The notes: generated by a model from the sequence alone, not told the origin. Positions 12,775 to 64,000 are shown, counted from the stretch's first letter. The stretch is 64,000 bases of DNA from Octopus sinensis (GCF_006345805.1 NC_043014.1:53816001-53880000); one strand, 5' to 3'. A program made the numbers and translations.

Positions 12775-12806
<32 letters not shown>

Positions 12807-16115: not shown

Positions 16116-16179
16116 TCCAGGTTTTATTGACAAATCTATTTGAGTGACCATGTTGAGGCTACCTCATTGACCGATACTG

Positions 16180-16248
<69 letters not shown>

Positions 16249-17189: not shown

Positions 17190-18116
<927 letters not shown>

Positions 18117-18760: not shown

Positions 18761-18793
<33 letters not shown>

Positions 18794-18796
<3 letters not shown>

Positions 18797-20821: not shown

Positions 20822-20894
20822 GAAGATTAACGGGGTGAAGATTAACGGGTGAAGATTAACCGGGAGAAGATTAACCGGGTGAAGGTTGAACGGA
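20822..20894. repeat. 14-15-bp minisatellite, 5 copies (GAAGATTAACGGGT)
   Basis: Units start at 20822, 20837, 20851, 20866 and 20881. Confidence 0.85.
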
Positions 20895-41510: not shown

Positions 41511-41542
<32 letters not shown>

Positions 41543-42157
41543 TACCTCTTTCCACTCCCTTCCTCTCACCATCCCTCTCCAGTTTTTGAGAATGAGAGAT
41601 ATTTGTTTTGTTTCTTTTTTATTCCGTCACTTCTTTAAAAGAACCAACCAACCAGTTGTCATGGCAACCACCAATGTGAACATTTCCATCACTGTTTTAC
41701 TCAAATGGTGATTTGTGAAATATATATATATATACTCTTTTATTCTTTTACTCTTTTACTTGTTTCAGTCATTTGACTGCGGCCATGCTGGAGCACCGCC
41801 TTCAGTCGAGCAAATCGACCCCGGGACTTATTCTTTGTAAGCCCAGTACTTATTCTATCGGTCTCTTTTGCCAAACCGCTAAGTGACGGTGACATAAACA
41901 CACCAGCATCGGTTGTCAAGCAATGCTAGGGGGACAAACACAGACAAATACACACACACATACATATATATATATACGACAGGCTTCTTTCAGTTTCCGT
42001 CTACCAAATCCACTTACAGGGCATTGGTCGGCCCGGGGCTATAGCAGAAGACACTTGCCCAAGATGCCACACAGTGGGACTGAACCCAGAACCATGTGGT
42101 TGGTTAGCAAGCTACTTACCACACAGCCACTCCTGCGTATATATATATATATATATG

Positions 42158-42192
<35 letters not shown>

Positions 42193-44585: not shown

Positions 44586-44620
<35 letters not shown>

Positions 44621-45507
44621 TTGTATGTATGTATGTATGTATGTATGTATGTATGTATGTATGTATGTATGTATGCCTGTATGTATGTATGTATGTATGG
44701 CATCCAGCTGTAGAAACTTTGCCAGACCAGATTGGAGCCTGGTGCAGCCCCCTGGCTTGCCAGCTCTCTGTCAAACCGTCCAACCCGTGCCAGCATGGAA
44801 AGCAGACGTTAAACGATGATGATGATGATGATGATATATGTATGTATATGTTCTTTTATTCCTTTACTCTTTTATTGTTTCAGTCATTTGACTGTGGCCA
44901 TGCTGGAGCACCACCTTTAGTCGAGCAAATCGACCCCAGGACTTATTCTTTGTAAGCCTAGTACTTATTCTATCAGTCAGTTTTGCCGAACCGCTAAGTG
45001 ACAGGGACGTAAACACACCAGCATCAGTTGTCAAGCAATGTTGGGGGGACAAACACAGAAACACAAACATATACACACACATACATATATATATATATAT
45101 ACGACGGGTTTCTTTCAGTTTCCGTCTACCAAATCCACCCACAAGGCTTTGGTCGGCCTGAGGCTATAGTAGAAGACACTTGCCCAAGGTACTACACAGT
45201 GGGACTGAACCTGGAACCATGTGGTTGGTAAGCAAGTTACTTACCACACAGCCACTCTGCGCCTAAAAAATATGGAACGCTTCACGAATTTGCATGATGA
45301 TGATATATATATATATACGACAGGCTTTTCTCAGCTTCTGTCTACCAAATCCACTCACATGGTTTTGGTCAGCATGCCGACTGCATGTCCAAGGTGCCAT
45401 GCAGTGGAACTGAACCCAGAACCATGTGGTTGGGAAGCAAGTTTCTTACCACGCAGCCACTTCTCTGCCTATGACATATGTATATACATATTTATATGTG
45501 TGTGTAT

Positions 45508-45558
<51 letters not shown>

Positions 45559-46012
45559 TGTAATTGCCAGACTATCAGATGTTGTTATACATCACTACTC
45601 ACAATGCACTTCCACGTATTGTTGTAGCTTTTGAATGATGTCCTGCAGCTGATAAGGCAGACAAACAGGCCAACATCCCCCATGAATGGAACTCCAGTCC
45701 ATCGTAGCTGGGTGGATTGGAGCAACATGAAATGAACACAACACTCTGTCTGGTCTGGGAATCAAACCCAGAACCTTGCAATTGCAAGTGCAACACCCTG
45801 ACCACTGAGCCACTAAATCATGGACAGTCACAGACACAGAAAAGACAAATGAAAGTTAATAAAAGTCTGGAAGATTCAGGTTCTTTTGGCCAGAGTTTTA
45901 GAAATGAAGTGACAAACAGTTTGTTGGTAAATCGAACAGACGGACAGACAAAATGCCGGCCAGCCAGAGAGATGGACAGAGGGACAGACGGACAGACAGG
46001 CAAGCTGGCAGG

Positions 46013-46050
<38 letters not shown>

Positions 46051-48649
46051 AATAATTGATAAAACTAAGTAACAGTAAAATTCAAAATTGAAGACTGTTT
46101 TTCGCAGGTGAAACAGAAGCAAAGCTGTTGAGTACACGAGCAGAAACGATGCAACATCTTAAAGAAAAACAGAAAGAAATCGATCTTCTTCACCACAAGC
46201 AAAATTCAATTCAGAGTTTCTATGAAAAAATAATTCATGTAAGGGCTCATGTGCCTAATCCTTGATTCTCAGTTTCCTTTTTTAATTAACATGCTGCTAT
46301 ATTTTCAGCCCCCAACTAACATTAACCTGACCCCTGTCATATTCTTCTGTCTTCATTAATTTTACCATTTGTTTCTCGGGATTTTTCTAATAATAAATTA
46401 ACTCTTATTTTTTTATATTTTGCTAACATTAAACTGTTTCTTATCTTCAATTTTCTCTTCAAATTAAACAATCAGTTTCTACTCAGTGTTATACCAACAT
46501 TAAGTCCCTATTTCTCAATATTCTTTTCACATAAAACTGCCCCCAAAAATCTTCTCTGGGTCAAAGAATGAATTTCATGGTTGTATGTCTTTCATTAAAT
46601 ATGAACGTATTCTTAAAAGAGTTTCGTAATGTCTGGGCAGACATCCTGGAACACATCTCATTCAACTTCATACAATTCTCTACCAAAATTACATTTTTAT
46701 TTGAATTTTTATCAATTTTTATCTTTTCCCACTTTTTTGTTGAGTCATTAACAATATGGAAGCCATGCAATTGGGAAGAAGGCAACAAAACAATTTCTCC
46801 AATAAAAGTCATCCCATTTATGCTGGGAGAGAAAAAGGAAAGAAAAGCATTTGAAAAAATTGTTGGTTAGAAGTATTCCAACCATAGTTATCCTGTCTTT
46901 TCCACAAATAATACATTCAAATTAAAATTATCCAATGTAGTCTTTTCCCAGAGGCAGTAAGGTGTGATTTGAGTAAATTTGGCTGTTATTTCTTAAAGCT
47001 TTATCCAATACATACAGGCTCCTTTGTTAATGTTTTTGGAAAGGTTATGTTCCTTCATATCAGTTGAGAACTTCTCTTCAAGTCAGTTGGGGCACCATCA
47101 TGGCACATGGCACCTCTTGGGCATTTCAAACCTTTCGTTACCCATGTTTCTCTTGACCATCTTTATTTCTATTGATTTGAATTTGTGGAAGAATTTAGTA
47201 AAATAACTTTCTCATTATTAAGCTGGTGTTTGGAACGTGAATTCACATGAAATTTTGAAGTAAGATTTAAATTTCGATCATTCTAAAAATAGAAAGTTTG
47301 TGTCATATAACCTTGGGCAGTGATGATGGGTAGAGTTTGGTATTGAAAGGAATGGGGACCAAAGATTACCATGGCTGAGTTTTTCAAAAGAGAAAGAGAA
47401 AGAGAGAAGAATAGTCCTGGATTAGTTCATTACTGCGTCCCCTGAGGGACGAAATGCGAAACTAAGCCCAGCACTGTTTGAACTTTGAGTGCCAAGAGCT
47501 GGAACCAATTCTACAAGATATTCTGTTTACTATTTTAAAATCTCTGCCACACACACACACATACACACACATTAGCCACATGATTAAGACATTTGTTCCT
47601 CAACCACATGGTTTTAGAGGTTTGGGGTTCAATCAAGCTGCGTGGTGCCTTGGTCGAGTGTCTTTGGCATAAAGGTCTTCTACTTCAGTAACCAAAGCTT
47701 TGTTAGTGAATTTGTTGGATAGAAACAGAAAGAAGACTATTGCTGGTGTGTGTGTGTGTGTGTACACACATTGCTACGCACACACACATGTATATATGTA
47801 TGTATATATTACTCACACACATTTATGTATATTATTGTTTAATTTAATGTTATTTATAGAAACAATCTAACATTATGCTGACAGATAACTCAGTATTGTT
47901 CAACAGAGTTGCTCAAGGGAAAGGTTGACTGACTTCAAAGTTTTGGCTTCATCAGAGGGTGATTCAATGTGGTTCTTTCTGGCTTTATACAGTGTTTGGT
48001 GGGGTTTTTTTAATATGTATAGTGAAAGTAAACAGGGGAAATAGTTGTAGAGGAAGAAGGTGGAACGGAGAAGGATAAGAAGCAAGTATGTGTTTGTAGG
48101 TATGACTTAATACAAATGTATGGTGAGGAGATTTATTTTGGTATGACACAGGAATAGTATTGTTGTTTTGGCTTCAGTCAAGTAAAGGAGTAAATAGATG
48201 TGTCATATTCAGGTCAGAATATTCTTTATGTGTAAGGTTGGTGTTTCTGTTTATAGATAATACATTTGGTCATACTGTTCAGATTGAACTGAGGTTGTAT
48301 TTGAGATTTCTATCTAGAAAGTTTTTTAAAGTTTGGATTGAGAAGGTTATGTCACAGTAAATATTCATAGTTACAATAAATTATTTTTATTATTATCAAT
48401 ATTATCATCATCATTATTAAGATAGCAAGTTGGCAGAATCGTTAGCATGCCAGACAAAATACTTAGTGGCATTTCATCTGTCTTTACACTGAGTTCAAAT
48501 TCTGCCTTTCGCCCTTCCAGGGTCAATGAAATAAGCATTAGTTGAGTACTGGGGTCGATGTAATTGTCTAACCACCTACTCACCCCACCCCTGCAAAAAA
48601 AATTTAAGGCTTTGCTTTTATCATAGAAAGGATCATTATTATTATTATG

Positions 48650-48687
<38 letters not shown>

Positions 48688-48855
48688 GCCTTAAATGAAA
48701 AACATTACTTTATTTGTTTATTCAAGCAAGTTTTCGATAACCTTGTGGTGCAAATCAATACAGGAAGAGATCATTTCGAAGGACACGGTGTAATGATTCA
48801 GGCCAGAAATAAGAAACTGCTTCTTGAATTTGGCTTAAATCCTCTTGATTTGTAA
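39814..48855 (+). CDS. CCDC153: CCDC153/DRC12-like ciliary coiled-coil protein, copy A, 6 exons, about 205 aa
   Basis: Exons 39814-39868, 41333(or 41339)-41422, 42491-42610, 43514-43606, 46108-46238 and 48727-48855 join in frame (phases 1,1,1,1,0). The protein has a Lys-rich N-terminus (MSTKKKAPKMAKKPSKKN), a coiled-coil body (EMKRQYKTMESEM..., YEKIIH) and a C-terminal EFGLNPLDL*. It aligns exon by exon with human CCDC153 as recalled (not BLAST-verified). RFX boxes nearby support a ciliary gene. Confidence 0.82.
41655..41668. promoter_or_regulatory. Second RFX X-box, in CCDC153 copy A intron 2
   Basis: GTTGTCATGGCAAC, one mismatch from GTTGCCATGGCAAC. Confidence 0.5.
41733..42402 (-). mobile_element. 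Long SINE with an exact tandem duplication of its 162-bp head
   Basis: 41976-42137 is identical to 42241-42402, and both are flanked by CA/TA microsatellites. Confidence 0.85.
43760..43991 (-). mobile_element. Full-length short tRNA-like SINE with a 17-bp target-site duplication
   Basis: TSD TTTAGTAAAATTATTTC at 43743-43759 and 43992-44008. Pol III A/B-box-like head (GGCAGAAATGTTAGCATG..., GAGTTCAAATT). Other copies lie near 5140, 29920, 33190, 36400, 48420, 59385 and 62975. Confidence 0.85.
44851..45264 (-). mobile_element. Long SINE copy in CCDC153-A intron 4
   Basis: Same head, core and tail as 17726-18116. Confidence 0.8.
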
Positions 48856-50284
48856 TATTTTGCCTCAAGATTTTCTGCTCCACAAGGTATGGCTTCACCT
48901 TTGTCTTCAGACAATTGTCTTCTCTTCGACAGGAAATGTTTAAAAAGGTTATTATAAGCAACCAAGGCTTTAATTAGGCATGCTTTAGTGGGGGCACGAG
49001 TTTGTTTGTAGGTTAGAGCTAAGGTCTTCATGTACAACATCCCCTACAGTGTCATTATTTAATATAGGAAGGTGTGATTGACTGCTATTTCCAGCAGAAT
49101 CAGAAGTCACATAGGGACTCTCTTTTTCTCTCCCATTGGTTTAGAGACACCAGATACAAGGGACTATTGACCCCAAAAGGGTCTTTTTTACTATACAAAG
49201 AATTGTCCTCACAAAGTAGGCATAGCCACTCGGCTAGAGTTATGTCCCTTGTTCCGAAACCCCGCAATCCGCTCTTTTCCAGACAAGAAAATGTCTCCAT
49301 GAGCACCTGGACTGCTGAAAATAGAAGCCAAATCTCCATCGTATCACACTACTGTACCAAAAATGCTTAATGTTGTCCAAGATAGACAATGCCTTAAAAT
49401 AACTTAAATGCTTTTGATCCCAGATCTCCTCGATCAGGACTGATCTCGGGGTTAAATAAGAATAAAAGCAAGTCTGGCTGTAACAGTATAATTTGATAAA
49501 TACGTTCCTTTGACTGCCGTGAGGAGCCCCATTTCTTTTGTTTGGGTGGTTAGAGAGTAAATGTGTCAAAGAAAATCTTGGACCTGGTTGGTTCACCGTT
49601 CACATTTGAGTTACGTCCCTTGCTCGATAATCTAACTAATGCAATCACAAAATTGTCCCTTTTAATCAGTTAGCTTTTAAAGTCCCTTGTTACAACAAAC
49701 CTAAAATATGCCCCAGCAGAGCATGTGGGGTGGGGGTGATGCGATCGGCTTACCCCTCTCCCACCCGAACATGCTGGCCTTGTGCCAAACTGGAAACCTT
49801 TATTACAACAAACAGAGAAATATTTCCAAATAAAAATACCAACAAAGTAAACAGTTTACTTCAGTTTGAATAATTCAACAATTTACACAATGGCAGCTGA
49901 TAGACGAAGGCTGGGCTGAGTGCCGCCCATCTTACTTTGAAGGGAGCTCATGAAAAGGGTTGAGTTCGTTATAGAATAACTGGGGAGTGAGATCATATTA
50001 ATTAAGATGAGATTGTTTTATATATTGGGTTGAGGCTGTTGTATTTTGAGTTAAAGTAGTTCTTGTGGGTTGAAGTCATTCTATGATGCATTGTGGCTGT
50101 CCTACATTGAGCTAAAACCGTATGTTGAGATCAAATTGTTAAAGTGAGTTTAATATAAGTTGTTGTGGAGGGACACCCAGGGTTTCAGAAGAGTTCATTT
50201 TGGATTGATTTCAGCTGATAAATATATGTTGAGTCGCTATTTCTTGTAAACTGAATGGAGGTTGAAGCATGTCTGAGTTGGGAA

Positions 50285-50851
50285 TCATCTGGTTCTTAGT
50301 TTCTGCATGCTGGTCTCAGTTAAGTAGAAGAAGTGAAGGAATTGTTGCTGCTGCTGGGTCAGTCGCACATGGGTGCATCTAGAGAGGATGTGGTTCCATG
50401 CAGTCGTGTCATCCCACTGGTTCTTCTGTCAATACGTAGACATGTTCGGTATGAAAAAAGGGAGCCGAATAGAGAGGACATTGGTTAGGAATTGGACTGG
50501 CAACACAACAATAACCTTGGTCAAGACATTTAACTCTTGTTGGATCAGTATAACTAGTTGTAACTAGGTAGCATTTCTTAGGTACAGCTCCCGTTAATCT
50601 AACCAAAACAAGGATTTCATTAGCTTGCAGGAATGGACACACACACACACACTCATTCACACACTCACACACACACAAAGTTTGATTATAGTTATAAGGG
50701 TTACTTTATCTGTTGGTTAATTCATTTATCATTAATATCACGTGTCAGAGTATAATATCGTTTGTATATTATAAACTCCGTAATACTTATATCATTTATA
50801 TTATATATTACAAAGCATTTTCAGAATTCATACATCACTTATATATTATTC

Positions 50852-50888
<37 letters not shown>

Positions 50889-52969
50889 GGACATTTAGAT
50901 AGATATGCTCATATACATTTGTTTATATATGTATATAATATATATATAATTTATATGTCATCCAAATTCTATGGCATTTACAAGGCCTTTTTCTCATGCA
51001 TCCTTTACTATCCCAAATATTTATGTAATCCTTATAACAATATATTGTATCATGTATATAGTATTTATATATCAATTATAAAATATATATTATATAGCAT
51101 TAATAACATTTAAATATCTTGTATTTCATTAATTGAATCATTTATAAATTGTTTCATAAAACATTTCTATTTCGTGCATGAGATGAAATATTTACACTTT
51201 GTTAATAAAATATTCCTTTGTCCTTTAATTAAATCACAGAGAATGGAAGAGTAGAGTTGGCCTCACCATCATCAGATAACAAGCAACAATGATGGCACTT
51301 CTTGTCCGCCCAGCTTTACAATGGACATAAACACACTGACCAAGTTGTTGATAATAGCTGATGAATGCCAGAGCTTGGGTGACCTGCCACAAGCTGGGTG
51401 TCCCAATGAAATCTTCAACTTCCACTTGAAGGAAACCAACACCAAGATCCTTCCATTCCTTAGAAAGAAACATATATTTAAAGGAGAGTGAAAGAGAAGG
51501 AAAGAGAGAGGAAGAAGGAGAGAGAGAAAAAGTGTTAATAAAATTATTCTCTATAATTGCATTTTATAGTTATTTTCTAATTGTGGAATGCACCAACTAA
51601 AAATATACATTATCTTACTATGTAAAATGCGGTGCCTGTGTGTGTGTGTCGTCTGTGCATGGCCAAACCTCTGGATCAATCTGTACCATACTTGGGGTAT
51701 GTGAACAATTTGACATTGGAAATAAATAATATTGCTTTATGCATTCCCCGTGTCGGTGGCACGTAAAAAGCACCATCCGAATCGTGGCCGAAGCCAGCGC
51801 CGCCTCGACTGGCTTCCGTGCAGGTGACACGTAAAATGCACCAATCCGACCGTGGCCAATGCCAGCCTCGCCTAGCACCAGTGCAGGTAGAACGTAAAAA
51901 GCACCCACTACACTCACGGAGTGGTTGGCGTTAGGAAGGGCATCCAGCTGTAGAAAAATTGCCAGATAAGACCGGAGTCTGGTGCAGCCTTCTGGCTTCC
52001 CAGATCCCCGGTCGAACCGTCCAACCCATGCTAGCATGGAGAACGGACGTTAAACGATGATGATGATGATGATAACGTAAAGATTCATTTCAGCTGTTTT
52101 GCCAATGTCAACTTCCTGTGTCTGGTGTTCTGACGTAGTAACTAAATAACCGGCTATTTACACACACACACACGTATGTATACATCATTACAGTTGTGAA
52201 GGTTTCTAATAAAAAGAATTTCTAAAGGTACTTTCATTTTCTTTATATTCTTCTCCAGCTTTCTATTTCTCTAGCTGTATGTTCAGGTTCATTTCTGTAA
52301 AAATTTCCAAATGTCTACATGTCTGCTTCATATATCTTTATATATATTTATGTGTATGTAAATACATTCTACATGGAGATAGATACCTCTTTTTCATGTC
52401 AACAGGTCTGTTAAGATATATAGCTATGTGAACCTTAGAGTTAACTCTGCTGCCTACATTGAGATCCTCCTGGAAACAATTAAGCCCTAGACAGACAGTG
52501 TATGCAATGGAGGGCCACATGTGTTTCAGTAAGACTCTGTACTATCACACATGACTCTAGTAACACAGGAATGGATGGCTGGAAATATTTGTGATCACAT
52601 AATCCCTAACATTTGGCCTCCTAATTCCCCAGATCTCAATCCATTGGACTATTACATGTGGAGCATTGTCAAGAGAGAGGTCAATGAACATGTCCATAAC
52701 ACCAAAGATTCTTTGAAAGCTGCCATAGTCAGAGTAATGTCCAAAATGAACCAGGACCACTTGATTCGAGCATGTAGATGATTTAGATCTCATATAGAAG
52801 CAGTTGTTGGAGCTGAAGATGGCTTTATTGAATAACATTATAGAAAAGGAGGTTTATTTTTATCCTCATAGCAGTTTTTGATAAATAAAGTTATTATCTG
52901 TTATTATATATCTGTTTTTTATAAACATAAATCTATCCACAAATATCCTGTAGATGGATGGATGGATTA

Positions 52970-53012
<43 letters not shown>

Positions 53013-55152
53013 TACATACTGATATATCGTTATATAATGATAGATACTTTCCCATGCTGGCACCACAGAAAAAGCACCCTTTGTACATTCTTTAAAGTGG
53101 TTGGTATAAGGAAGGACATCCAACCACAGAAACTGTGCCAGACCAGACGATTGGAACCTGGCGCAGCTCTGTCAGGCCACCCAACCCATGTCAGCATTGG
53201 AAATGGATGTTAAACGATGATGATGGTGGTGTAAGTGGTGATGATGTCTTTATAACACCGAGATGGATTCTACCTCTTTTGATGGTGTAAAATGCTTTGT
53301 TTCAAAATTTTCATTGGCTGAGAGAACACCTCTGACGTTTTCCTTTTCCACCAACTGGAATGAAAAGAGAAAAGAAAAATTCAATTAACTCAATCAGAAT
53401 TTTCATTAAAAGTTAATTAACGAAGAGGCTATCATTGAATCAAATGAGACTTTTCACTGTGATGACACCACAAGAGGCTGAAGTCTTAAGATGTTGCTGT
53501 TGTTGTTGTCCCCTAACACCCAATCAACCTTGATTGAACAGACCTATGATCAAACACAATCCAACCATAACCATCCTTTGAGAACTATATTACTCAATAA
53601 ATCTTTCCTTGTTTAGTTCTGTTGGCATTTGATTCTGATAGACATTTGACTGCTATTTCTAGCATGTTGAATAACTTGCTCAGATGCTTCCTTATTTGGT
53701 CATTAGTAAGATGTCAGACAGCTGAACTATAAATGCCTGTAAACTGGCTCAGTCAGCTCAGCTGTAAACAGATATCAGTGGGTCTATACAGGTCACTGAG
53801 GGGTGGGGTGGGGCAGTGATGTACTGGGTGACCCATAACGAAGGCCACATTTATGCATTTATACAACCTTTTATCTTTCGCCTTTTACTTGTTTCAGTCA
53901 TTAGACTGTGGTCATGCTGGAGCACCTCCTTGAAGTATTTCAGTTGAATGAATTAACCCCAGGACCTCCTTTTTTTTTGTTCTTTTTAAGCCTGGTACCT
54001 ATTCTGTTGATCTCTTTTGCCAAACCGCTAAGTTACAGGGATATAAACACACCAATACCAGTTGTCAAGTTGTGGTGTGAGACAAACGCAGACACACACA
54101 AACACTTTCACAGGGTGTAATGCTGTGGGATTGAACCCAGAACGATGTGGGCAGGAAGCCAGCTTCTTACCACACAGCCACATTTGGGGCCCTTTGTGGA
54201 ATTTACCGAGAGTTTCATAAAACTGAAGAGGTCCATTGAAAATCCTCCTCTCGTGGGCCGAAGCCATAAATAAAACTACTTCCCCATTCGCAATCTCATT
54301 TCGACCAATTCCATCCCCATAACGGAGCTCAGCCATGTTGAGATGTCATCATCAGTCCAGTGTAACCTGAGTGAGTGGGGGGATCAGGTTGACCCCCGGT
54401 CTGATTTGGGAAGGAATTACTGCAAAGTTGACCATTCCATGGAGAAAATGCAGAGAGAGATTAGTACCATACGTACATACACTCAAGTATAGCCATATAT
54501 ATATATATAGATTAATCAGCCGAAATTGCAAGGATGATCCAGTTCTTGACTGAAGATTGAAGGCTTCGAATGTCCCGTCCATGTTTTTTGTATCGTCTTC
54601 TAAATGTTTTGCGTTCTTGTCCCAGTTTGTATTTTTTTACATATACATATATATATATATATATATATGAGTTCAGCAAAAATTTAGATTCTGATGAATA
54701 TGGTACTTAAGTTAAGGCACCAGAATTTAGTACGGTATTATCCATACAATTTCAAAATAAGGTGATTAGAATTAAAATAAGCAACAAGGATATCCAGAGG
54801 TAATGCATTACCTCTGGATATCCTTGTTGCTTATTTTGATATATATATATATATATATATAGACATACATACATGCATGTGACATGCATACACGCATATA
54901 TACACACATACACATATATGCATGCATACAGACACACACACACACACATATACATCCGTTCATATACATGTACATAAATCTTACCTCTGTGGCCATTTGC
55001 CGAAATGGTAAGGCACCAAAGATGATTGAGCTGTCTATACGAACATACCAATGACGAAAGGAAGCTAAATACAAGGCATAATTGTAGAAAAGGGACGGAT
55101 AAAAGGCAACTTTGCTGAGGATTGATGTTCCAATGGCAGAAAATTGATCCAT
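50285..55152 (-). CDS. PTPMT1: PTPMT1 paralog B, 4 coding exons, 193 aa
   Basis: Exons 55152-54985 (MDQFSAIG...[10 protein letters not shown]...GALPFRQMATE), 53354-53274 (LVEKENVRGVLSANENFETKHFTPSKE), 51458-51267 (EWKDLGV...EDFIGTP...[19 protein letters not shown]) and 50425-50285 (KNQWDDTTAW...KLRTR*). The exon structure is the same as paralog A and there are no stops or frameshifts. Confidence 0.92.
52490..52850 (+). mobile_element. Tc1/mariner transposase relic (C-terminal catalytic part) in PTPMT1-B intron 2
   Basis: VFQ*DSVLSH..TQEW and WPPNSPDLNPLDYYMWSIVK motifs. Confidence 0.8.
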
Positions 55153-55588
55153 TGCCTCTGGAGATATTCACGTTTTCCAAGGAACGATTTTAACCAATTG
55201 ATCTGAAATGAGATGAAAAAAAACAAGTTTCAAACCCTGGTTGTTTCTTCAGAGGTTTAGTAAGCTCATAACAAGATCAACAGTGCATGACCCTGCAGGT
55301 GGGACCCAGCTAGAATTTTCATCAGGTCGAGTAGACCATCCTGCTCCCGAATAAGAGTTGTTTAAGGATGTTGAATGAAACACCCATGTTTCCAGAGGGG
55401 AATTATTCAAATCCCAAAGAATCCCTCTCAACACATGGCTATGATGCTCCCCCACTACTTCTGCTCATGATCAGAGATGCACATATCGTCAGCCACTAAG
55501 GGACATACTCAACTGGTTACGGTCAAACAACTGACAAGCAAATCTGTGGTATTGAGCAGAATATTTGCTGTAGCCCATCTTTTATACC

Positions 55589-56082
55589 ATTATTATTATT
55601 ATTATTATCAATATTATTATTATTATTATTATTATTATCAATATTATTATTATTATTATCAATATTATTATTATTATTATTATCAATATTATTATTATTA
55701 TTATTATCAATATTATTATTATTATTATTATCAATATTATTATTATTATTATTATCAATATTATTATTATTATTATCAATATTATTATTATTATTATTAT
55801 CAATATTATTATTATTATTATTATCAATATTATTATTATTATTATTATCAATATTATTATTATTATTATCAATATTATTATTATTATTATTATCAATATT
55901 ATTATTATTATTATTATCAATATTATTATTATTATTATTATCAATATTATTATTATTATTATTATCAATATTATTATTATTATTATTATCAATATTATTA
56001 TTATTATTATCAATATTATTATTATTATTATTATCAATATTATTATTATTATTATTATTATTATCAATATTATTATTATTAT
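55589..56082. repeat. Compound CAA(TAT)n minisatellite of about 490 bp
   Basis: About 20 units of CAA followed by a variable run of TAT. It produces the spurious poly-Y and poly-I ORFs. Confidence 0.95.
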
Positions 56083-57657
56083 TCTATGCTCATGTATCAA
56101 ATGTTGCCATCGTTTCTCAAATTATCAAAACAACAAAAGATTTGGGGAGTTTGAGATTGTTGTTTTGTGAGACAAGAGAAACCCTGAAAATGTCAGTTGA
56201 TATAATCAACAGAAAGGTTCTGACAGGAGCCATGGTGGGGATGCTTACCCTGTATTTCTTTTGGTTTAGAGGAACAGTCAGTGGCCATGGCCCTCACCTC
56301 TGAAAGGATTGACACTGGTGTGGTTTATAGTTCTATTGAATAGTTAAAAGTTGACAGGGAATTCTAGTGGGGAGGGCCGTTGTTCTGGGGGAGGAAGGAT
56401 TGGCTGTAGGGGTTATATTTTCTTTTATCTATTACTTATTTCAGTCGTTAGACTGTGGCCATGCTGGAGCACCACCTTAAAGAATTTCCAGTCCAATTCT
56501 TCGAATCCAGTACTTTTTTTTCAAGCCTGGCACTTACTCTATTGGTCTCTTTTGCCAAACCACTAAGTTACAGGGATGTAAACACACCAACACTGTGGTA
56601 GGGGACAAAGACACATGCACATAGATATACATATGATGGGCTTCTTTCAGTTTCCATCTACTAAATCCCCTCACAAAGCTTTGGTCAGCCTAAGGTTGTT
56701 GCAAAGACCCAAGGCTGTTGTAGAAGACATTTGTCAAGGTGAGACAGAGTGGGATTGAACCTAGAACCAGGTGGTTGGGAAGCAAACTTCTTACCACACA
56801 GCCATACTTGCAGCTAAAGTGTGGAGTTTTGAGGGGAGACAATAATAAGTATATGAAGGGGGGGAAGGTGAGTGGATGACAAGAGCCTGGGTGAGAGGGG
56901 TCCAAGGATCAAATACTACTGTAAAAGCAACAGAAAAGGCAGAGAAAGGGACGGGAATAGAGAGAGAGAGAGAAGCAGAGAGAGACAGAGTGACAAGCAG
57001 AGAGAGAGAGAGAGAGACAAGCAGAGAGAGAGAGATAGAGAGTGAGAATGACAGGCAGAGAGAGAGAGGAGACAGTATTCTCATTAAGTGATGGAAATTC
57101 TAAAAATCCCCAAAGTGTGTGCATGTCTTACAATTGAATATCAACCTACCTCAACTCTGCAACTGAACGCTGTACTCGGTATGATGACCACCACTGAAGA
57201 AAAATAGTTTTTGTTTTCTTGTTGTCAGGTGTGTGTGAATGTGTCACTGGTCAAACGCTTTCAAGTGACCAGTTGCTGTGTCCTGTGCAAAACCACAGAG
57301 GAATGATGGAGAGAAGTTGAAAAGATGAAGCTGTCAAGGGAAGGCAGCCTTGGATGACGGGGATTCTGCTTGGTGGCCGTCAATTTGTATGTGAATCGGT
57401 TGGCATTTTCCATCCCACACAGCATTGAATTCTTTGAAATCCTAAAGAATTCCTCGTGATTTCACCAACAATAGGGAGAAAGAAAACGACCACACTGACA
57501 TTGTTCACACACACACACAAACACACACATATGGAAACATACACACACACCCGTGTGCATACAGACACACACACCCGTATGTATAGGTACATAAACACAC
57601 AAGGATTTAACAAAGAAAAATTGAAGAATTACAAGCATTAACTATTTCGTCCAGGCA

Positions 57658-57776
57658 TCACGTCATCATTACCCTCACGTCATCATTACTATCACGTCAT
57701 CATTACTCTCACGTCATCATTACTCTCACGTCATCATTACTCTCACGTCATCATTACTCTCACGTCATCATTACTA
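57658..57776. repeat. 17-bp minisatellite, 7 copies (TCACGTCATCATTACTC)
   Basis: Units start at 57658, 57675, 57692, 57709, 57726, 57743 and 57760. Only the last 2 bases of each unit vary. Confidence 0.95.
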
Positions 57777-57868
57777 TCACTATCACCACCACTACCACCT
57801 CTCCTACCCCATCCTCTTTCACATCATCATCATCTCTATCACTTAATGTCCCTCTCTCTTGCTGTTTC

Positions 57869-57900
<32 letters not shown>

Positions 57901-58528
57901 ACACACATCTATTATGTATACATGTGTGTGTGTGTGCGCATGCAAACACACACGCACACATATGACTTGTGTGTGTGGTTAAGAAGTTTAACCACATGGT
58001 TCCAAGTTCAGTCCCACCGTGTGATACCTTGGGCAAATGTCTTATACTAAAGCCCCAGGCCAATTAAAGCCTTGTCAGTGGATTTAGTAGACGGAAACTG
58101 AAAGAAGCCCATCGTATATATATCATCATCATTTAATGTCTGTTGTCCATGCTGGCATGGGCTGGACGTATACATATACATACATACATACTTACATATA
58201 TACATACATATATATATATATATATTATATGTATGTATATAAATGTTTGTTGGGTGTGTGTGTGTGTGTATGTAGTATTTGTATGTGTGTATATGTGCAT
58301 ATATGCACATGCACACACACACACACAAAATTACTCAATACATATTTATGTTGGAAGTGGGATGGTTTACGAAATAATAAAGTCATTATTTTCTGAAAGA
58401 ATTCAAAGACAATAAAACGTAATTATAAAAAAATGATTTATTAATTAACAATTAATTTTCACTCTCTTTCCCTCTCTCTCTCTCCTTCTCACTTTTTCCT
58501 TTTCATCTCTACAATTGTGTCATTTTTG

Positions 58529-58750
58529 GAATGGAAGTTGAATATTTCATTGAGTGGCAGGTCACTCAAGCTCTGGCATTCATCAGCTATTATCAACAAC
58601 TTGGTCAGTGTGTTTATGTTCATTGTAAAGCTGGCCGGACAAGAAGTGCCATCATTGTTGCTTGTTATCTGATGATGGTGAGGTCAACTCTACTCTTCCA
58701 TTCTCTGCCATTTAATTAAAGGACAAAGGAATATTTTATTAACAAAGTGT
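58529..58750 (+). pseudogene. Inverted relic of PTPMT1-B exon 3 plus the start of the following intron
   Basis: Reverse complement of 51194-51458. It has a 31-nt deletion between TGGAAG microhomologies and a 12-nt deletion, and the acceptor AG is lost. The HCKAGRTRS codons and the GTGAG donor (58678) are retained. There are 6 mismatches over 58554-58750. Confidence 0.9.
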
Positions 58751-61228
58751 GAATGATATACTTTATAAATGATACATAATTGATATGATAAATGGTATAT
58801 ATTTTATATAAAAACGATACTTAATGAATACATATATATGTGATATAAAAAATTATACTTAAATTGTATAAAACTAAAAATAAATGATATTTGATATAAA
58901 GAGCTTTGACAAAAAAGTAGACTAATTGGTCAACCAAGTTAAACAAACGATCGATTAGTTAGTTAAGAGTTAACCAATTGACTAATACTAAAGGAGAGGA
59001 ATTGAACCAGCGCATGTGTTATTGGAAGAATGACCGTCCCTGGACACAACGAAATTGATAAAAAGAATTACTCTAAAAACGTGTTGAGTGCAGTTGTTAT
59101 GGAGACGAGCAAGATGAAAGAGAAGTGAGTCGGCAAAGGAAAAGCAGGTGATAATAAACAGAATAAGGGAGACATGATGGGGCGGAGGCTGTTTCCATGT
59201 CTTGATTGCTGAGGAGGAAAAAAATGGGCAAAACGAGCAAAATATTTGCAGCATGAAAGTGAAAGACTTTTGATAAAAGGAATATTATCGAATAACGAGA
59301 GACTGAAGCAGGAATGCCAACGGAAGTACCAAGAGGAGGGGAAAATTCCTCAGTTATTTCATGAAGACAATATTGGCTTCAAATTTTGGCACAAGGCCAG
59401 CAAGTACAGGGAGGGGGGGTAACTTGATTACATTGACCCCAGTGCATAACTGGTACTTATTTTATCAACCCTGAAAGAATGGAAGCAGAATTTGAACTCA
59501 GAACATTGAGACAGACAAAACGCTGCATTCAGCGTTTTTCCCTGTGTGCCAATGAGTCAGCCTTCCATGAAGAGAATATGGAGAGGCACCTTCATCTCTG
59601 GGTACATCAGTCTCTAATCTGAACAACGGCAAGTGGACAGAGACATCAGGGGGCTCTAACCTGACCTAACCAATGTGTCCCTTAAGTGGATGGGAAATCC
59701 TAATGCATCTACTTTTTAAAATAACAACTTGCATTACTTGTGATCCGTTTTCCTTTTAGAGTTATTTATTATAAGCTTTTAATTCACACAACCTTATAAA
59801 GTTCTTTTTTGCCTAATGCTCCTAATACACTCACCCGCTTCGCCCACATTTCCGCTCTTTGTATAATTTTTCTTTTTGTCCAACGTCAACCTTTTGTAAT
59901 CTGAATCTTTCATAATTTTTCATGCATCAACGAGAACGGAGGTCGTTGCCAACAGAGGTGAAATAAAACAAATTACTTTACTTTTATTGTGCAAATATTT
60001 TTATTCATTCAAACTGAAGTAAATTGCTTAATTATTGTTTGAATTTTGCTTTGATATTTGGAATTTTTATTTTAAAGTTTGCTTTTATTTGTTATATTAA
60101 TGGAGTTTTAATAGTTTTGGGAGAGGAAAATCCAAATCTCGTGACTCCATTCAAAAGAAAGACCAAACGAAGGGACATAACTCTTCGTGACTGGCCGATA
60201 TAAAAAGAAGAAGAAGAGGGAAAAAAAGGCGAGAGATGAATAGAATTGAGCCCAATGTTGGCGTGGAGCGAAACATCAACATCCCACTGGTTGAAAATCA
60301 ATCACTAACAGACGTGAACCCAAAACTGGGTGCTGCTGTGTCCACTCTCTACCTTTGCTACTACTACTACTACTACAATGACCTCTGAACTGTGAGCTGG
60401 TTGGTCTCGGCCTCTTACCACCAATATTCATGCACCCTCCACCCACTGGTCTCCCCCACCCCGCCTACTTGTCACCCAGGTGCACCCAATCCGTCTCACA
60501 CCCATCCACCCCCATGCACTCACCATTATGTCCATTCCTTCTTCCTCCCTACAATGCCATCCCTCTGGAATCTTCCTCCCAGTTCATGTCTTTTTAGCAT
60601 ATGTTGAATTACAAATGGAACAGAAATGACCCCATCACAAGTCTCAGAGAACCTGCAATGTTCAGCGGTAATGTCCCTTCGGCCAGACTCGACAAGAAAT
60701 AAATTCTAAATAAAAAAAAACTGTTTAATTTTGAAATCTTTCTCTTCCTGTAGAACCGCAAATATTCCAGATACAGGGTTCTTTCCTCGTGAGTCAAAAG
60801 CATGTTAATCTTTGTATCAGTGAATAAATGATTTCAGGTTTTAGTTGCATTTTGATTTTAAGGGTTTGGTCAAAAGGAATGGGTTGGAATCCCCGAGACT
60901 AGTCAGATGTTGTTTGCTTTATATTCTTAATGCGTTGGCTGGGCTCTTGTCCTTTGCAGACCCTCTCATACTTGCAAGATCAATGGGGGTCATGTTTTTC
61001 TTGAACAACCACAAATCAATGACTTGTGTGATGGTTGATGGTACTTTGATATAAGCAGCAGACAATTCCAGAGATATTCTGATATTTTTAGAAGAAAGAA
61101 TTTGGCAGGGAATCTTGCAAGTGCGGAATTCAAATACAAACAAGTTTGAGACAGACAGAAGCACTGTATTACATGGACAAAGATTGAGGGGATCGATTTG
61201 GGGCCTAATTAAAGCCTTGGTTGCTTAT

Positions 61229-61452
61229 CTCTCTTTTACACTTTACTCTTTTACTTGTTTCAGTCATTTGACTGCGGCCATGCTGGAGCACTGCCTTTAG
61301 TCGAGCAACTCAACCCTGGGATTTATTCTTTGTAAGCCCAGTACTTATTCTATCGGTCTCTTTTGCCGAACCGCTAAGTGATGGGGACGTAAACATACCA
61401 GCATCGGTTGTCAAGCAATGCTAGGGGGACAAACACAGACACATAAACACAT

Positions 61453-61491
<39 letters not shown>

Positions 61492-61653
61492 CAACAGGCT
61501 TCTTTCAGTTTCCGTCTACCAAATCCACTCACAAGGCATTGGTCGGCCCGGGGCTATAGCAGGAGACACTTGCCCAAGGTGCCACGCAGTGGGAGTGAAC
61601 CCAGAACCATGTGGTTGGTTAGCAAGCTACTTACCACACAGCCACTCCTGCGC
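61229..61653 (-). mobile_element. Long SINE inserted in the CCDC153-B 3' UTR
   Basis: It interrupts the tract shared with the CCDC153-A 3' UTR. Putative 5-bp TSD ACAAG/ATAAG. Confidence 0.85.
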
Positions 61654-61756
61654 CTTGTAATAACCTTTTTAAACATTTCCTGTCGAAGAGAAGACAATTG
61701 TCTGAAGACAAAGGTGAAGCCATACCTTGTGGAGCAGAAAATCTTGAGGCAAAATG

Positions 61757-63527
61757 TTACAAATCAAGAGGATTTAAGCCAAATTCAAGAAGTTTTTTCT
61801 TATTTCTGGCCTGAATCACTTTGGCTTGTTTCTCCCATCGATCCTTTAACTTCTCCATTTTGAACACAAGATTATCCAAAGCCCCCTGAAATAAATAAAT
61901 AAATAAAAAGACATTTAAATAAATATGTGAATTTTATGGAGGAGGATCAGAATCGAAATCGATCAATGGAAATTGCAGATGTGTTACCAGTGCCGGTGGC
62001 ATGTAGGAGAACCTTCCGTTTCGCGACCGTTGCCAGCACCGCCCCGTTTCGTGTCCGTTGCCAGCCTCGCCTGGCCCTCGTGCCGGTGGCACATAAAAAG
62101 CACCATCCGTTCGTGGCCATTTGCCAGCTCTGTCTGGCACCTGTGCGGGTGGCACGTAAAAAGCACCCACTACACTCACAGAGTGGTTGGCGTTAGGAAA
62201 GGCATCCAGCCGTAGAAACACTGCCAGATTTGACTGGGCCTGATGAAGCCTTCTGGCTTCACAGACCCCAGTAGAACTGTCCAACCCATGCTAGCATGGA
62301 AAACGGACGCTAAACGATGATGATGAGGAGGAGGAGGAGGAAAGTACATGGTAGAATCGTGAGAATGTTAGAGTTAAATGCCTTGTGGTATTTAAGTCCT
62401 AGCTTTTGCATCCTCAGGTCAACTTTGTCTTTCATTCTTCTCTGTTTGATATGATAAAGTACCAGTCATGTGCTGGAGGTGGTTTAACATTCCAATAAAA
62501 CATCATAGATGTGAATGGAATTAATCATAGAAGCCTCACACTTACATGGCTTCTGGCAAAGGAGGAAGATGCTGAGTTATCTTCAGACGAAAGAGCTTCT
62601 GTGAATGAATTAGAGAAGAGTGAATTCTGCAACAGGGGCCCAGGAATCCTGTGGGCTTTTTAAACTGGGTAACGGATTCAGTCTATCACCGGACAACAGG
62701 TTCTGTCCGTCCAGCAGACTAATGGCTACATTTCCACCTCCCCCAGTGACACTTGCCAGATTTGAAATCAAATGATTGCACAACAAAATTCTTCACCAAA
62801 CACCCATGTTTGCAACCAATTGAGCTCCAATGCCCGAATAATTGAATAAAATTAAATTATTAATTAATTAACAATTAAATAAACCTGTATGCTTCCAGTT
62901 ACATGTGTTCCAGTCGATCCACTCAACAGAACAGGCTGCTCAGGAACACAAATATCAAGGAAAATTATCGGTTTTAAATTTTGGCACAAGGCCAGCAAAT
63001 TTGGGGGAGTGGGGGGGGTAAGTGATTAACATTGACCCCCCGGACACAACTGGTACTTATTTTATCAACTGCAGCTAAGCATTTTCCCCAGGGTGCTGAC
63101 AAATGTTTGCAAAATGTTGAGAAATGGGAGTTAATTTATTATTAGAAGGTTAATATCAGTTGGGGGCTGAAAATATAGCAACATGGGTAGGCACACTCTC
63201 CTACCCTGATGTAATCTCCAGGGATACAGGCATCCAGCAACAGGACCTCCGTAATGCTATGATGGACCGTGAAGTCTGGCGTAACATAGTAAATTCCATT
63301 GTCTTGACCACGGTCGAACAATAATGATGATAGCAACATGTTATGTAAATAATGAACTGAGAATTAAAAATCAGGGAAATGGTTGTGAGCCCTTACATGA
63401 AGTATGTCCTGGTAGGAATTCTCCATGGCATTGTTCTTCCGCTGGAAAAGCACAATTTCTTCCTGTTTCTGGTTCATAAGAAGTTTGGCTTCTTTTTGTG
63501 CCTTTAGTAATTCTGATTCTTTATCAC
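61757..63527 (-). CDS. CCDC153: CCDC153/DRC12-like copy B, last two exons (5' part lies beyond the window end)
   Basis: Exon 63527-63397 is 131 nt, the same length as copy A exon 5, with the same GTAAGGGCTCA donor (DKESELLKAQKEAKLLMNQKQEEIVLFQRKNNAMENSYQDILH). Exon 61885-61757 is 129 nt (GALDNLVFKMEKLKDRWEKQAKVIQARNKKKLLEFGLNPLDL*). Confidence 0.82.
63170..63335 (+). mobile_element. RTE-like LINE 3' terminal fragment
   Basis: YPDVISRDTGIQQQDLRNAMMDREVWRNIV followed by an (AAT/GAT) tail. Confidence 0.55.
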
Positions 63528-64000
63528 CTGTGAAATACACCAACCGTGTCATTCTCTGCCATTTGACTCTCCATTTTATCAACTAATTTGCTAAATCAAA
63601 GATTCACTGATTTACAATCAACAGCTTTTTATCGATCGGCCGTCCTTTTGTTGGCCTCAGTCAACAAATTTTATTCGTAGTTGTTGGGTGTCACTGATTA
63701 GTTTTCATTTTTGTTAATCTCTTATTTTTTACTTGTTTCAGTCATTGGACTGTGGCCATGCTGGGGCACCACCTTGTGAGGTTTCAGTCAAATGAATTGA
63801 ATTCAATGAGATAAAACTGCATCACATCAGACACTATTGATTATCTGATAATGCGAATGACTGAAACGGCTACAAAACGAAATTCTCTGTTATTTTCTAA
63901 GGACTTTTACTCTTTTATGATTGCACAATCAAACTACAACATAAATCTTGTTTTTCTGAGGTTATTCTCTTAGTTTCTTATTTTGGAACTGTCCTGTTCC

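What the first reader, a model, noticed from the sequence alone, without database searches (positions are those of the whole stretch)
48727..63527. Old inverted duplication (CCDC153 + PTPMT1) with mirror-image, near-identical patches: probable arm-to-arm gene conversion
Seen in sequence: the order CCDC153-A(+), PTPMT1-B(-), PTPMT1 exon-3 relic(+), CCDC153-B(-) is symmetric about 55.0-55.3 kb. The two CCDC153 copies are old: 14/43 identical residues in exon 5, and 38/69 identical nt in the first 23 codons of the last exon. From 48794 / 61818 the same exon switches abruptly to about 97% identity (5 mismatches in about 186 nt), covering the last 19 codons and non-coding 3' UTR. The mirror PTPMT1 patch (51194-51390 versus 58554-58750) is also about 97% identical (6/197), including intron, with only weakly similar flanks. 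Inference: an ancient palindrome-like duplication has been locally homogenised by gene conversion, as known for sex-chromosome palindromes. Near-identity of UTR and intron sequence is not explained by protein-level selection.
Basis: partly seen in the sequence, partly recalled or inferred. Interest (0 to 1): 0.82.

Follow-up and report, generated by a model that had tools for sequence, protein, structure and literature searches.

The report
Gene-conversion islands in octopus inverted duplication
Two ~190-base stretches in mirror-image copies of an old octopus gene duplication stay nearly identical because the copies keep overwriting each other, a well-known process (gene conversion) seen here in a clean new example.

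Summary
The window is Octopus sinensis (CM016876.1). CCDC153-A(+), PTPMT1-B(-), a lone PTPMT1 exon-3 relic(+) and CCDC153-B(-) lie in mirror order. Two inverted patches are 97% identical: 48794-48979 vs 61818-61654 plus 61228-61203, and 51194-51390 vs 58554-58750. Their flanks are 50-63% identical.

Inside the patches, every informative site groups the two arms by species: 5:0 in patch 1, and 6:0, 7:0 and 2:0 in patch 2. Outside them, every site groups by paralog (0:24 and 0:78-92; Fisher p 8e-6 to 1e-10). In O. bimaculoides the PTPMT1 patch is identical over about 236 nt. Conversion has therefore recurred independently in each lineage, even since the sinensis/vulgaris split. Three independent assemblies make an artefact very unlikely.

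Three refinements:
- The 19 shared C-terminal codons are a motif conserved across phyla.
- The patch edges coincide with indels, a SINE insertion, and a 355-nt flank that sits on opposite arms in different species.
- Argonauta hians shows that the duplication predates the Octopus/Argonauta split.

This is a new member of a known kind (interlocus gene conversion), of moderate interest.

The parts
39814..48855 (+). CCDC153-A (DRC12-like, fast-evolving paralog). Coding exons are about 39814-39868, 41333-41422, 42491-42610, 43514-43606, 46108-46238 and 48727-48855 (stop included).
   Evidence: The splice model was corrected with P0128/P0001. tblastn of P0128 gives 100% matches for exons 3-5; exons 2 and 6 match at 82-86% because those HSPs run past the exon boundaries.
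48794..48979 (+). Patch 1, arm A: the last 19 codons plus stop of CCDC153-A (48796-48855) and 124 nt of 3' flank/UTR.
   Evidence: It has 5 mismatches in 186 nt to arm B. Quartet sites are 5 species-pattern and 0 paralog-pattern.
48980..49078 (+). A 99-nt 'filler' found only in O. sinensis and O. vulgaris. It occupies the place where O. bimaculoides arm A carries segment X, and it marks the distal edge of patch 1.
   Evidence: Alignment. BLAST finds it only in O. sinensis and O. vulgaris.
46239..46430 (+). Older, now extinct conversion tract at the 5' end of intron 5 of CCDC153-A. It is more similar to the B copy than exon 5 is.
   Evidence: A vs B is 78-85% here (O. bimaculoides, and cross-species) against 62-67% in exon 5, with paralog-type site patterns.
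50285..55152 (-). PTPMT1-B, the functional gene (193 aa, P0130). Exons are about 55152-54982, 53357-53274, 51461-51267 (exon 3, with the catalytic HCKAGRTRS) and 50425-50285.
   Evidence: tblastn of P0130 gives 96-100%. The called genes carry DSPc Pfam hits in L002, L003, L004 and L006.
51194..51390 (-). Patch 2, functional arm: the 3' 124 nt of PTPMT1-B exon 3 (51267-51390) plus the first 73 nt of intron 3 (51194-51266).
   Evidence: It is 191/197 identical to the relic. Quartet sites are 6:0, 7:0 and 2:0 in the species pattern.
58554..58750 (+). Patch 2, relic arm: an orphan PTPMT1 exon-3 fragment plus the intron stub. Wider diverged homology covers 58409-58889. The acceptor side has a 36-nt gap, and O. 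sinensis and O. vulgaris have a further 12-nt deletion.
   Evidence: No other relic exon is detectable.
61203..61228 (-). Patch 1, arm B, distal piece, separated from the rest of the patch by the SINE insertion.
   Evidence: It is 26/26 identical to 48954-48979.
61229..61653 (-). SINE-like insertion splitting patch 1 in arm B. It is present in O. sinensis and O. vulgaris and absent from both O. bimaculoides arms.
   Evidence: Family copies in the window are 87-90% identical. The sequence was read. Presence in O. vulgaris is shown, and absence in O. bimaculoides.
61654..61818 (-). Patch 1, arm B, proximal piece: the last 19 codons plus stop of CCDC153-B (61816-61757) and the 3' flank.
   Evidence: It is 160/165 identical to 48794-48958.
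60848..61202 (-). Segment X, a single-copy sequence directly distal to patch 1. It lies on arm B in O. sinensis and O. vulgaris but on arm A in O. bimaculoides, at 93.5% identity.
61757..64000 (-). CCDC153-B (canonical DRC12-like paralog), 3' part only. Exon 5 is about 63527-63397 and the last exon is 61885-61757. The rest of the gene lies beyond the window end.
   Evidence: tblastn of P0003 gives 93-98%. L002 extends the window and contains the whole gene.

Best explanation
An ancient inverted duplication of a convergent gene pair (CCDC153 -> <- PTPMT1) produced the order CCDC153-A(+), PTPMT1-B(-), PTPMT1'(+), CCDC153-B(-). The duplicates diverged almost to saturation, and PTPMT1' decayed. 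Two short islands of about 190-240 nt have kept exchanging sequence by non-allelic (interlocus, intrachromosomal) gene conversion. In this process a break in one arm is repaired using the inverted copy 7-13 kb away as template.

Each island contains the most constrained coding sequence of its gene. One holds the deeply conserved C-terminal motif of DRC12/CCDC153. The other holds the catalytic P-loop exon of PTPMT1. I infer that selection kept these segments similar enough to seed homologous repair. Conversion tracts then spill into the adjacent neutral UTR or intron and stop where indels or high divergence block heteroduplex formation.

For PTPMT1 the partner is a dead exon fragment that repeated overwriting from the functional gene keeps 'fresh'.

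Shown here: the islands, their edges, the species-wise clustering, and recurrence in three lineages. Inferred: the seeding-by-constraint logic, the mostly functional-to-relic direction, and the repair mechanism itself.
For: 1. Identity jumps from about 55% to 97% within one exon and falls back at indel edges.
2. Site patterns cluster by species inside the patches and by paralog outside. Patch 1 is 5:0 against 0:24 (p 8e-6). Patch 2 is 6:0, 7:0 and 2:0 against 0:78, 0:83 and 0:92 (p 2e-9, 1e-10, 2e-4).
3. Within-species arm identity exceeds orthologue identity inside the patches. For patch 2, O. bimaculoides is 201/201 and O. sinensis and O. vulgaris are 194/201, against 190-192/201 between O. 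bimaculoides and either of the other two species. For patch 1, the arms are 128/132 and 130/133 against 123-124/132 between species.
4. O. sinensis-specific and O. vulgaris-specific derived bases are each present in both arms (alignment columns 366 and 372). Conversion therefore continued after these two species split; the two are about 98% identical here.
5. The identity covers synonymous sites (18 of 19 codons have no difference), the 3' UTR and intron sequence.
6. The arms are homologous beyond the patches. Flank alignment z-scores are 15 and 7, there is a collinear island at 49818-49891 vs 60059-59986, and the exon structure matches.
7. The duplication is old. Argonauta hians has an A-type CCDC153 (exon 4 is 60% identical to A and about 30% to B) next to PTPMT1.
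8. Nearly all differences in the exon part of the relic are synonymous, as expected if variants arise in the selected copy and are then copied across (read directly).
9. An intronic tract of intermediate identity (78-85%) with paralog-type patterns looks like an older conversion tract that has since stopped.
Against: - No reads, population data or direct conversion events were available.
- The number of informative sites per patch is small (5-7), although none of them is discordant.
- Cross-species identity of the patches and of X (93-95%) is higher than that of most neighbouring non-coding sequence (81-92%). Some purifying selection may therefore also act on the 3' UTR and on X, and cannot be separated from conversion here.
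- The direction of transfer and the 'seeding by constraint' idea are inferences from two islands only.
- The history of segment X has more than one possible reconstruction: reciprocal loss, or transfer followed by loss.
Confidence: 0.9

Rival explanations
1. Purifying selection alone. The patches are conserved functional elements (the protein motif plus a regulatory 3' UTR, and the catalytic exon plus a splice or intronic element) that have simply not diverged since the duplication, with no exchange between the arms.
For: The C-terminal motif IQARNK..LLEFGLNPLDL is conserved in a nemertean DRC12 and in another distant homologue. Exon 3 encodes the CX5R active site. The patches and X are somewhat better conserved between species than their surroundings.
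Against: - Selection cannot make both arms share species-specific substitutions: 5, 6, 7 and 2 such sites, and no paralog-pattern site.
- The relic has lost its acceptor side and every other exon, so it is not a selected coding exon.
- Synonymous, intronic and UTR positions are as identical as replacement positions.
- Argonauta shows no conservation of this UTR.
Confidence: 0.03
2. Assembly or polishing artefact. Reads from one arm were mapped onto the other and homogenised the consensus.
For: Short, near-identical inverted repeats are a known hazard for consensus polishing. No reads could be inspected here.
Against: The same patches, with the same edges, occur in three assemblies from three different species' projects (GCA_006345805.1, GCA_951406725.2, GCA_001194135.2). 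Each has its own diagnostic bases, and residual arm-specific differences are shared by O. sinensis and O. vulgaris. An artefact would not leave the same 3 paralog-specific differences in two independent assemblies.
Confidence: 0.02
3. The patches are recent secondary copies, such as a transposable element or a templated insertion pasted into both places, rather than homogenised parts of an old duplication.
For: The region is dense with SINE-like and other repeats, and one of them has inserted into patch 1. The flanks of patch 2 are only about 54-63% identical.
Against: - Patch 1 begins in frame inside a homologous exon whose upstream half is an old paralog.
- Both patches sit at orthologous positions in three species.
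- Each patch has exactly two copies in the window and in all fetched loci.
- Flank homology is significant, and the spacing of the patches is mirror-symmetric.

A whole-genome copy count was not possible.
Confidence: 0.03

Closest known systems
Interlocus gene conversion in segmental duplications, for example the tail-to-tail inverted RHD/RHCE pair (PMC4467073, PMC3790853)
   Same: Short conversion tracts lie between nearby paralogs in inverted orientation. They are detected as longer-than-expected identical stretches and as conflict between gene tree and species tree. Tracts include UTR and intron sequence.
   Different: Here the background paralogs are far more diverged (about 55-65% nt, 42-44% aa). 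Conversion therefore survives only in two islands of about 190-240 nt, rather than across a duplication of high identity.
Arm-to-arm conversion in sex-chromosome palindromes (human Y P1-P8; from my own knowledge, not tested here)
   Same: Intrachromosomal conversion between inverted arms keeps the copies alike within a species while the species diverge from each other.
   Different: Palindrome arms are tens of kb to Mb long and more than 99.9% identical over their whole length, with a short spacer. Here only about 0.4 kb of roughly 15 kb is homogenised, the locus is not known to be sex-linked, and the 'spacer' contains a functional gene.
Exchange between a gene and its pseudogene (CYP21A2/CYP21A1P, GBA/GBAP1; from my own knowledge)
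   Same: A functional gene and a dead copy exchange short tracts. The dead copy stays recognisable and is a potential donor of deleterious changes, such as the relic's 12-nt deletion.
   Different: The dead partner here is a single exon fragment in inverted orientation. No pathogenic or polymorphic transfer is documented.

Membership tests
Interlocus (non-allelic) gene conversion / concerted evolution | A discrete tract of elevated paralog identity with sharp edges, set against diverged homologous flanks. | tested here: met
   Identity is 97% in 186 and 197 nt against 50-63% in the flanks. Fisher p is 5e-15 and the run-length permutation p is 5e-5.
Interlocus (non-allelic) gene conversion / concerted evolution | Paralogs cluster by species inside the tract and by paralog outside it. 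| tested here: met
   Species to paralog sites are 5:0, 6:0, 7:0 and 2:0 inside, against 0:24 and 0:78-92 outside.
Interlocus (non-allelic) gene conversion / concerted evolution | The identity extends to selectively neutral positions (synonymous, intron, UTR). | tested here: met
   18 of 19 codons have no synonymous difference. The 3' UTR and 73 nt of intron are included.
Interlocus (non-allelic) gene conversion / concerted evolution | Variants shared between the arms within populations, or directly observed conversion events. | not testable with these tools
   No reads or population data were available.
Sex-chromosome-type palindrome | Arms near-identical (>99%) along their whole multi-kb length, with a short spacer. 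| tested here: not met
   Outside the two patches the arms are barely alignable. The interior of about 12 kb holds PTPMT1-B.
Transposable-element copies | Multiple dispersed copies, with no collinear coding context. | tested here: not met
   There are exactly two copies of each patch in the window and loci, and they are embedded in frame in homologous exons. A whole-genome count was not possible.
Conserved element under purifying selection only | Orthologues are at least as similar as paralogs, and the paralogs share no lineage-specific changes. | tested here: not met
   Within-species arms are more alike than orthologues, and lineage-specific bases are shared by both arms.
Gene-pseudogene conversion pair | One partner is non-functional. 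| tested here: met
   The relic lacks exons 1, 2 and 4 and the acceptor side of exon 3, and it carries a 12-nt deletion in O. sinensis and O. vulgaris. Whether it is transcribed was not tested.
Known structured RNA (Rfam) in the patches | A match reaching a family's gathering score. | tested here: not met
   Only sub-threshold hits turned up, all in microsatellite sequence and none inside the patches. No tRNA was found.

The most novel reading that the evidence does not exclude
The inverted PTPMT1 exon-3 relic may not be a passive passenger. It may be retained because it acts as an antisense partner. It lies upstream of PTPMT1-B on the same transcribed strand as CCDC153-B. A read-through transcript, or a 5'-extended PTPMT1-B pre-mRNA, would therefore fold the relic onto exon 3. 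The result would be a near-perfect RNA duplex of about 200 bp. That is the kind of substrate that ADAR editing (unusually extensive in coleoid cephalopods) or small-RNA pathways act on, and conversion would serve to keep the duplex perfect.

Nothing here supports transcription across the relic. The one alternative first exon I could map (isoform X3, 53033-53209) lies downstream of it.
Probability: 0.05. Interest if true: 0.75.

Novelty: new member of a known kind. Interest (0 to 1): 0.38.

Why it matters
This is a well-resolved case of how gene conversion behaves at the end of a duplication's life. Nearly all of the two arms has diverged beyond recognition. Two islands of about 200 nt still exchange sequence, each anchored on the most constrained coding segment of its gene.

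The locus shows three things:
- A lone dead exon can stay 96.5-100% identical to its living counterpart while the rest of its gene has decayed beyond detection.
- Conversion edges coincide with indels.
- Conversion can keep a fast-evolving paralog's C-terminus canonical. In Argonauta, the A-type copy has no B-type CCDC153 nearby in the 23-kb locus examined, and its C-terminus has degenerated.

There are practical consequences as well:
- Such islands mislead paralog dating and orthology calls in cephalopod genomes.
- The relic is a standing source of potentially harmful changes to PTPMT1-B.
- The inverted patches could mediate inversion of the 12-kb interior.

None of this changes current understanding of gene conversion. 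It is a good teaching example and a marker locus for measuring conversion rate in octopods.

Tried and rejected
- **Pfam on six-frame translations.** I built exon models by hand and with tblastn instead.
- **My first CCDC153-A model.** It had a wrong exon-3 acceptor, which I corrected from P0001/P0128.
- **Look-up of my own 193-aa PTPMT1-B model.** The identical database entry P0130 worked.
- **Inversion hypothesis for segment X.** A crossover between the patch-1 arms would flip the whole interior. The interior from 49079 to 60402 is collinear in all three Octopus species, so a single inversion is rejected. I prefer reciprocal loss from an ancestrally longer shared tract, or transfer followed by loss, but could not decide between them.
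- **Staggered-break inversion and simple 'tandem unit' duplication models.** Neither reproduces the observed gene order. A convergent-pair unit followed by reciprocal loss fits both Octopus and Argonauta (reasoned).
- **Search for further relic exons of the second PTPMT1.** None was found.
- **Search for a B-type CCDC153 or a relic in the Argonauta locus.** None was found.
- **Rfam and tRNA scans of the region.** Only microsatellite noise turned up.
- **Literature search.** It found no paper on this locus.
- **Test of the dsRNA idea through isoform X3.** Its alternative first exon maps to 53033-53209, a stretch that is repeated elsewhere in the window and so looks repeat-derived. It lies inside the gene and not upstream of the relic.
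- **GC content of the patches.** It gave no clear sign of GC-biased conversion.
Full report
**Identity of the window and the genes.** The window is Octopus sinensis chromosome CM016876.1. Locus L002, fetched through the CCDC153-B protein, matches window 64000-51757 at 100% over 12,244 nt. O. vulgaris (L003, L007) is about 98% identical and collinear. O. bimaculoides (L001, L004) is about 81-92% identical in orthologous non-coding sequence.

CCDC153-A (+) has six coding exons between 39814 and 48855 and equals XP_029647553 (P0128). Only the last two exons of CCDC153-B (-) lie in the window (63527-63397 and 61885-61757), and it equals P0003. PTPMT1-B (-) has four exons between 55152 and 50285 and equals P0130. 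An older paralog, PTPMT1-A (-), lies at 10.5-21.7 kb. On the plus strand at 58409-58889 there is a fragment of PTPMT1 exon 3. No other exon of that copy is detectable.

**Checking the observation.** Every figure in the finding was reproduced exactly:
- 14/43 identical residues in exon 5.
- 38/69 identical nt in the first 23 codons of the last exon.
- 160/165 plus 26/26 in patch 1.
- 191/197 in patch 2.

Identity drops to 19/60, 20/40 and 12/40 immediately outside the patches. In the exon-6 alignment, 34 of the first 85 positions differ against 5 of the next 186 (p 5e-15). The longest perfect run is 98 nt (permutation p 5e-5). The repeat finder and BLAST recovered the same two inverted pairs as the top hits.

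Arm B of patch 1 is split by a 425-nt SINE-like element (61229-61653). The patch resumes for 26 nt beyond it. This element is present in O. vulgaris and absent from both O. bimaculoides arms.

**The decisive test.** I aligned both arms from three species and counted the three possible informative site patterns in quartets.

| Region | Comparison | Species : paralog sites inside | Species : paralog sites in flank | Fisher p |
|---|---|---|---|---|
| Patch 1 (133 columns shared by all six sequences) | sinensis/bimaculoides | 5:0 | 0:24 | 8e-6 |
| Patch 2 (201 columns) | sinensis/bimaculoides | 6:0 | 0:78 | 2e-9 |
| Patch 2 | vulgaris/bimaculoides | 7:0 | 0:83 | 1e-10 |
| Patch 2 | sinensis/vulgaris | 2:0 | 0:92 | 2e-4 |

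For patch 1 the flank is the adjacent intron plus the first 23 codons. Pairwise identities agree with the site counts. In patch 2 the two arms are 201/201 in O. bimaculoides (identical over about 236 nt) and 194/201 in each of O. sinensis and O. vulgaris. O. bimaculoides sequences are 190-192/201 to those of the other two species. In patch 1 the arms are 128/132 and 130/133, against 123-124/132 between species.

An O. sinensis-specific base and an O. vulgaris-specific base are each present in both arms of that species (columns 372 and 366). Conversion has therefore happened since those two very close species separated. In patch 1, three arm-specific differences are shared by O. sinensis and O. 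vulgaris. The last full homogenisation there predates their split but follows the split from O. bimaculoides.

This pattern cannot come from selection alone. It cannot come from an artefact either, because it is seen in three independent assemblies that also share residual arm-specific differences.

**What protein-level selection does explain.** The last 19 residues belong to a motif (IQARNK..LLEFGLNPLDL) that is conserved in a nemertean DRC12 and another distant homologue. The amino-acid identity by itself is therefore expected. What is not expected is the absence of any synonymous difference in 18 of the 19 codons, or the near-identity of 124 nt of 3' flank. For PTPMT1, the 73 nt of intron are similarly unexplained.

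Both islands contain the most constrained coding piece of their gene. One holds the DRC12 C-terminal motif and the other holds the exon encoding the HCKAGRTRS active site. I infer that constraint kept enough identity there for homologous repair to keep engaging. Tracts then spread into neighbouring neutral sequence. This is an inference from two cases.

**Edges of the patches.**
- The distal edge of patch 1 is structural. In O. bimaculoides arm A, the patch continues into a 355-nt single-copy segment X.
- In O. sinensis and O. vulgaris the same X (93.5% identical) follows the patch on arm B. Arm A has an unrelated 99-nt filler instead.
- O. bimaculoides arm B has a deletion of about 1 kb. It starts inside the patch and removes the distal patch, the position of X, and 445 nt found only in O. 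sinensis and O. vulgaris.
- The simplest reading is that the shared tract once covered at least 540 nt on both arms (patch plus X) and was truncated by different indels in the two lineages. A transfer followed by a loss is equally parsimonious.
- A single inversion is excluded, because the interior is collinear in all three species.
- The proximal edge of patch 2 in O. sinensis and O. vulgaris coincides with a 12-nt deletion in the relic. O. bimaculoides lacks that deletion, and there the identical tract runs about 35 nt further, up to a 36-nt gap.

**Age and shape of the duplication.** Homology between the arms outside the patches is weak but real. Local alignment scores of the patch-2 flanks are 15 and 7 standard deviations above shuffles. 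A collinear island (49818-49891 vs 60059-59986) lies between the patches. The exon 5 / exon 6 structure is shared. The spacing from patch 1 to patch 2 is 2.4 kb on one arm and 2.6 kb on the other once the SINE is removed.

The first 100-200 nt of intron 5 are 78-85% identical between A and B. Exon 5 is only 62-67% identical, and the site patterns in that intronic tract are paralog-type. I read this as an older conversion tract that has stopped.

In Argonauta hians, two contigs (L005, L008) show the order ETF(+), an A-type CCDC153(+), PTPMT1(+), KIAA1328(-). There is no relic and no B-type gene. The Argonauta CCDC153 is A-type: its exon 4 is 60% identical to A and about 30% to B. The A/B duplication therefore predates the Octopus/Argonauta split.

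One order fits both taxa if losses were reciprocal: A> <P P'> <B <KIAA1328. Octopus lost P', leaving the relic. Argonauta lost P and B. This reconstruction is inference.

The Argonauta A-type C-terminus has degenerated (MEFQSSSKKLLQEFGFNPLDM). That is what one would expect if the canonical C-terminus of Octopus A is maintained by copying from B. It is a single comparison.

**Rivals.**
- Selection only, assembly artefact, and recent secondary copy or transposable element are each contradicted by specific results given in the rival section.
- No Rfam family or tRNA lies in the patches.
- I found no paper on this locus.
- The general phenomenon, and the two detection criteria used here (over-long identical runs, and gene-tree/species-tree conflict), are standard (PMC4467073; PMC3790853).

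**Verdict.** It is interlocus gene conversion between the arms of an old inverted duplication, surviving as two small islands. One of those islands keeps an orphan pseudo-exon alive. This is a new example of a known kind and not a new mechanism. It is not a palindrome in the sex-chromosome sense. Interest is moderate, because the case is unusually clean and has some instructive features, but a specialist would not be surprised.

The most novel reading still open is that the inverted relic serves as an RNA-duplex partner for PTPMT1-B exon 3. It has no support so far. The only alternative first exon I could map lies downstream of the relic.

Noticed in passing
window 10517-21673 (-): PTPMT1-A, an older paralog (P0012, 219 aa, about 54% identical to PTPMT1-B). 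tblastn places its exons at 10517-10651, 11875-12075, 13324-13404, 15298-15519 and 21641-21673. Its exon 3 is about 80% identical to patch 2 over 80 nt and shows no sign of conversion. A. hians also has this paralog on the same contig (P0017).
   Followed up: partly
window 17726-18116, 41735-42137, 42205-42402, 44852-45264, 61229-61653: A SINE-like family of about 400-430 nt with an internal TA/CA microsatellite. Copies are 87-94% identical to one another. Copies also occur in O. bimaculoides, O. sinensis and O. vulgaris flanks. One copy splits patch 1 on arm B in O. sinensis and O. vulgaris only.
   Followed up: partly
window 60848-61202 vs L004 16144-16498: Single-copy segment X sits next to CCDC153-B in O. 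sinensis and O. vulgaris, but next to CCDC153-A in O. bimaculoides (93.5% identical, same orientation relative to the patch). The history is unresolved: reciprocal loss, or transfer followed by loss.
   Followed up: partly
window 55265-55589 and 12328-12663: A direct repeat of about 325 nt at 86.6% identity. One copy lies just upstream of PTPMT1-B exon 1 and the other in a PTPMT1-A intron. The 55-kb copy is present in O. vulgaris (96.6%) but was not found in the O. bimaculoides locus, so it is probably a mobile element.
   Followed up: partly
window 55496-56300: A long satellite array with a unit of about 24 nt (ATTATTATTATTATTATCAATATT-like), close to the axis of symmetry of the inverted duplication. 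A 17-nt tandem repeat lies at 57641-57797.
   Followed up: no
window 63175-63329 (-): A 155-nt insertion flanked by a 10-nt duplication (ATGTTGCTAT) in intron 5 of CCDC153-B. It is present in O. sinensis and O. vulgaris and absent in O. bimaculoides. It interrupts the older A/B-similar intronic tract.
   Followed up: partly
window 53033-53209 (-): The annotated alternative first exon of PTPMT1-B isoform X3 (P0011). Its reading frame resembles sequence repeated elsewhere in the window (for example 51917-52030 and 44101-44217), so it looks like a repeat-derived exon.
   Followed up: no
L005 7635-8760 and L008 7251-8877 (Argonauta hians): The A-type CCDC153 next to PTPMT1 has a degenerate C-terminal motif and no detectable exon 5. 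No B-type CCDC153 was found in these loci, and none appeared among the CCDC153 protein-search hits. L005 and L008 have the same gene order on two contigs, so they may be haplotigs or a duplication.
   Followed up: partly
patch 2 in L007 vs window: Inside patch 2, O. sinensis and O. vulgaris orthologues differ at 8-9 of 201 sites. That is about twice the roughly 2% seen across the locus. It is as if conversion had distributed older arm differences differently in the two species.
   Followed up: no
L009 (Tubulanus polymorphus) and L008: DRC12/CCDC153 lies next to an ETF-domain gene in both the nemertean and Argonauta. This suggests the A-type copy occupies the ancestral DRC12 position, even though B keeps the more canonical sequence.
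   Followed up: no
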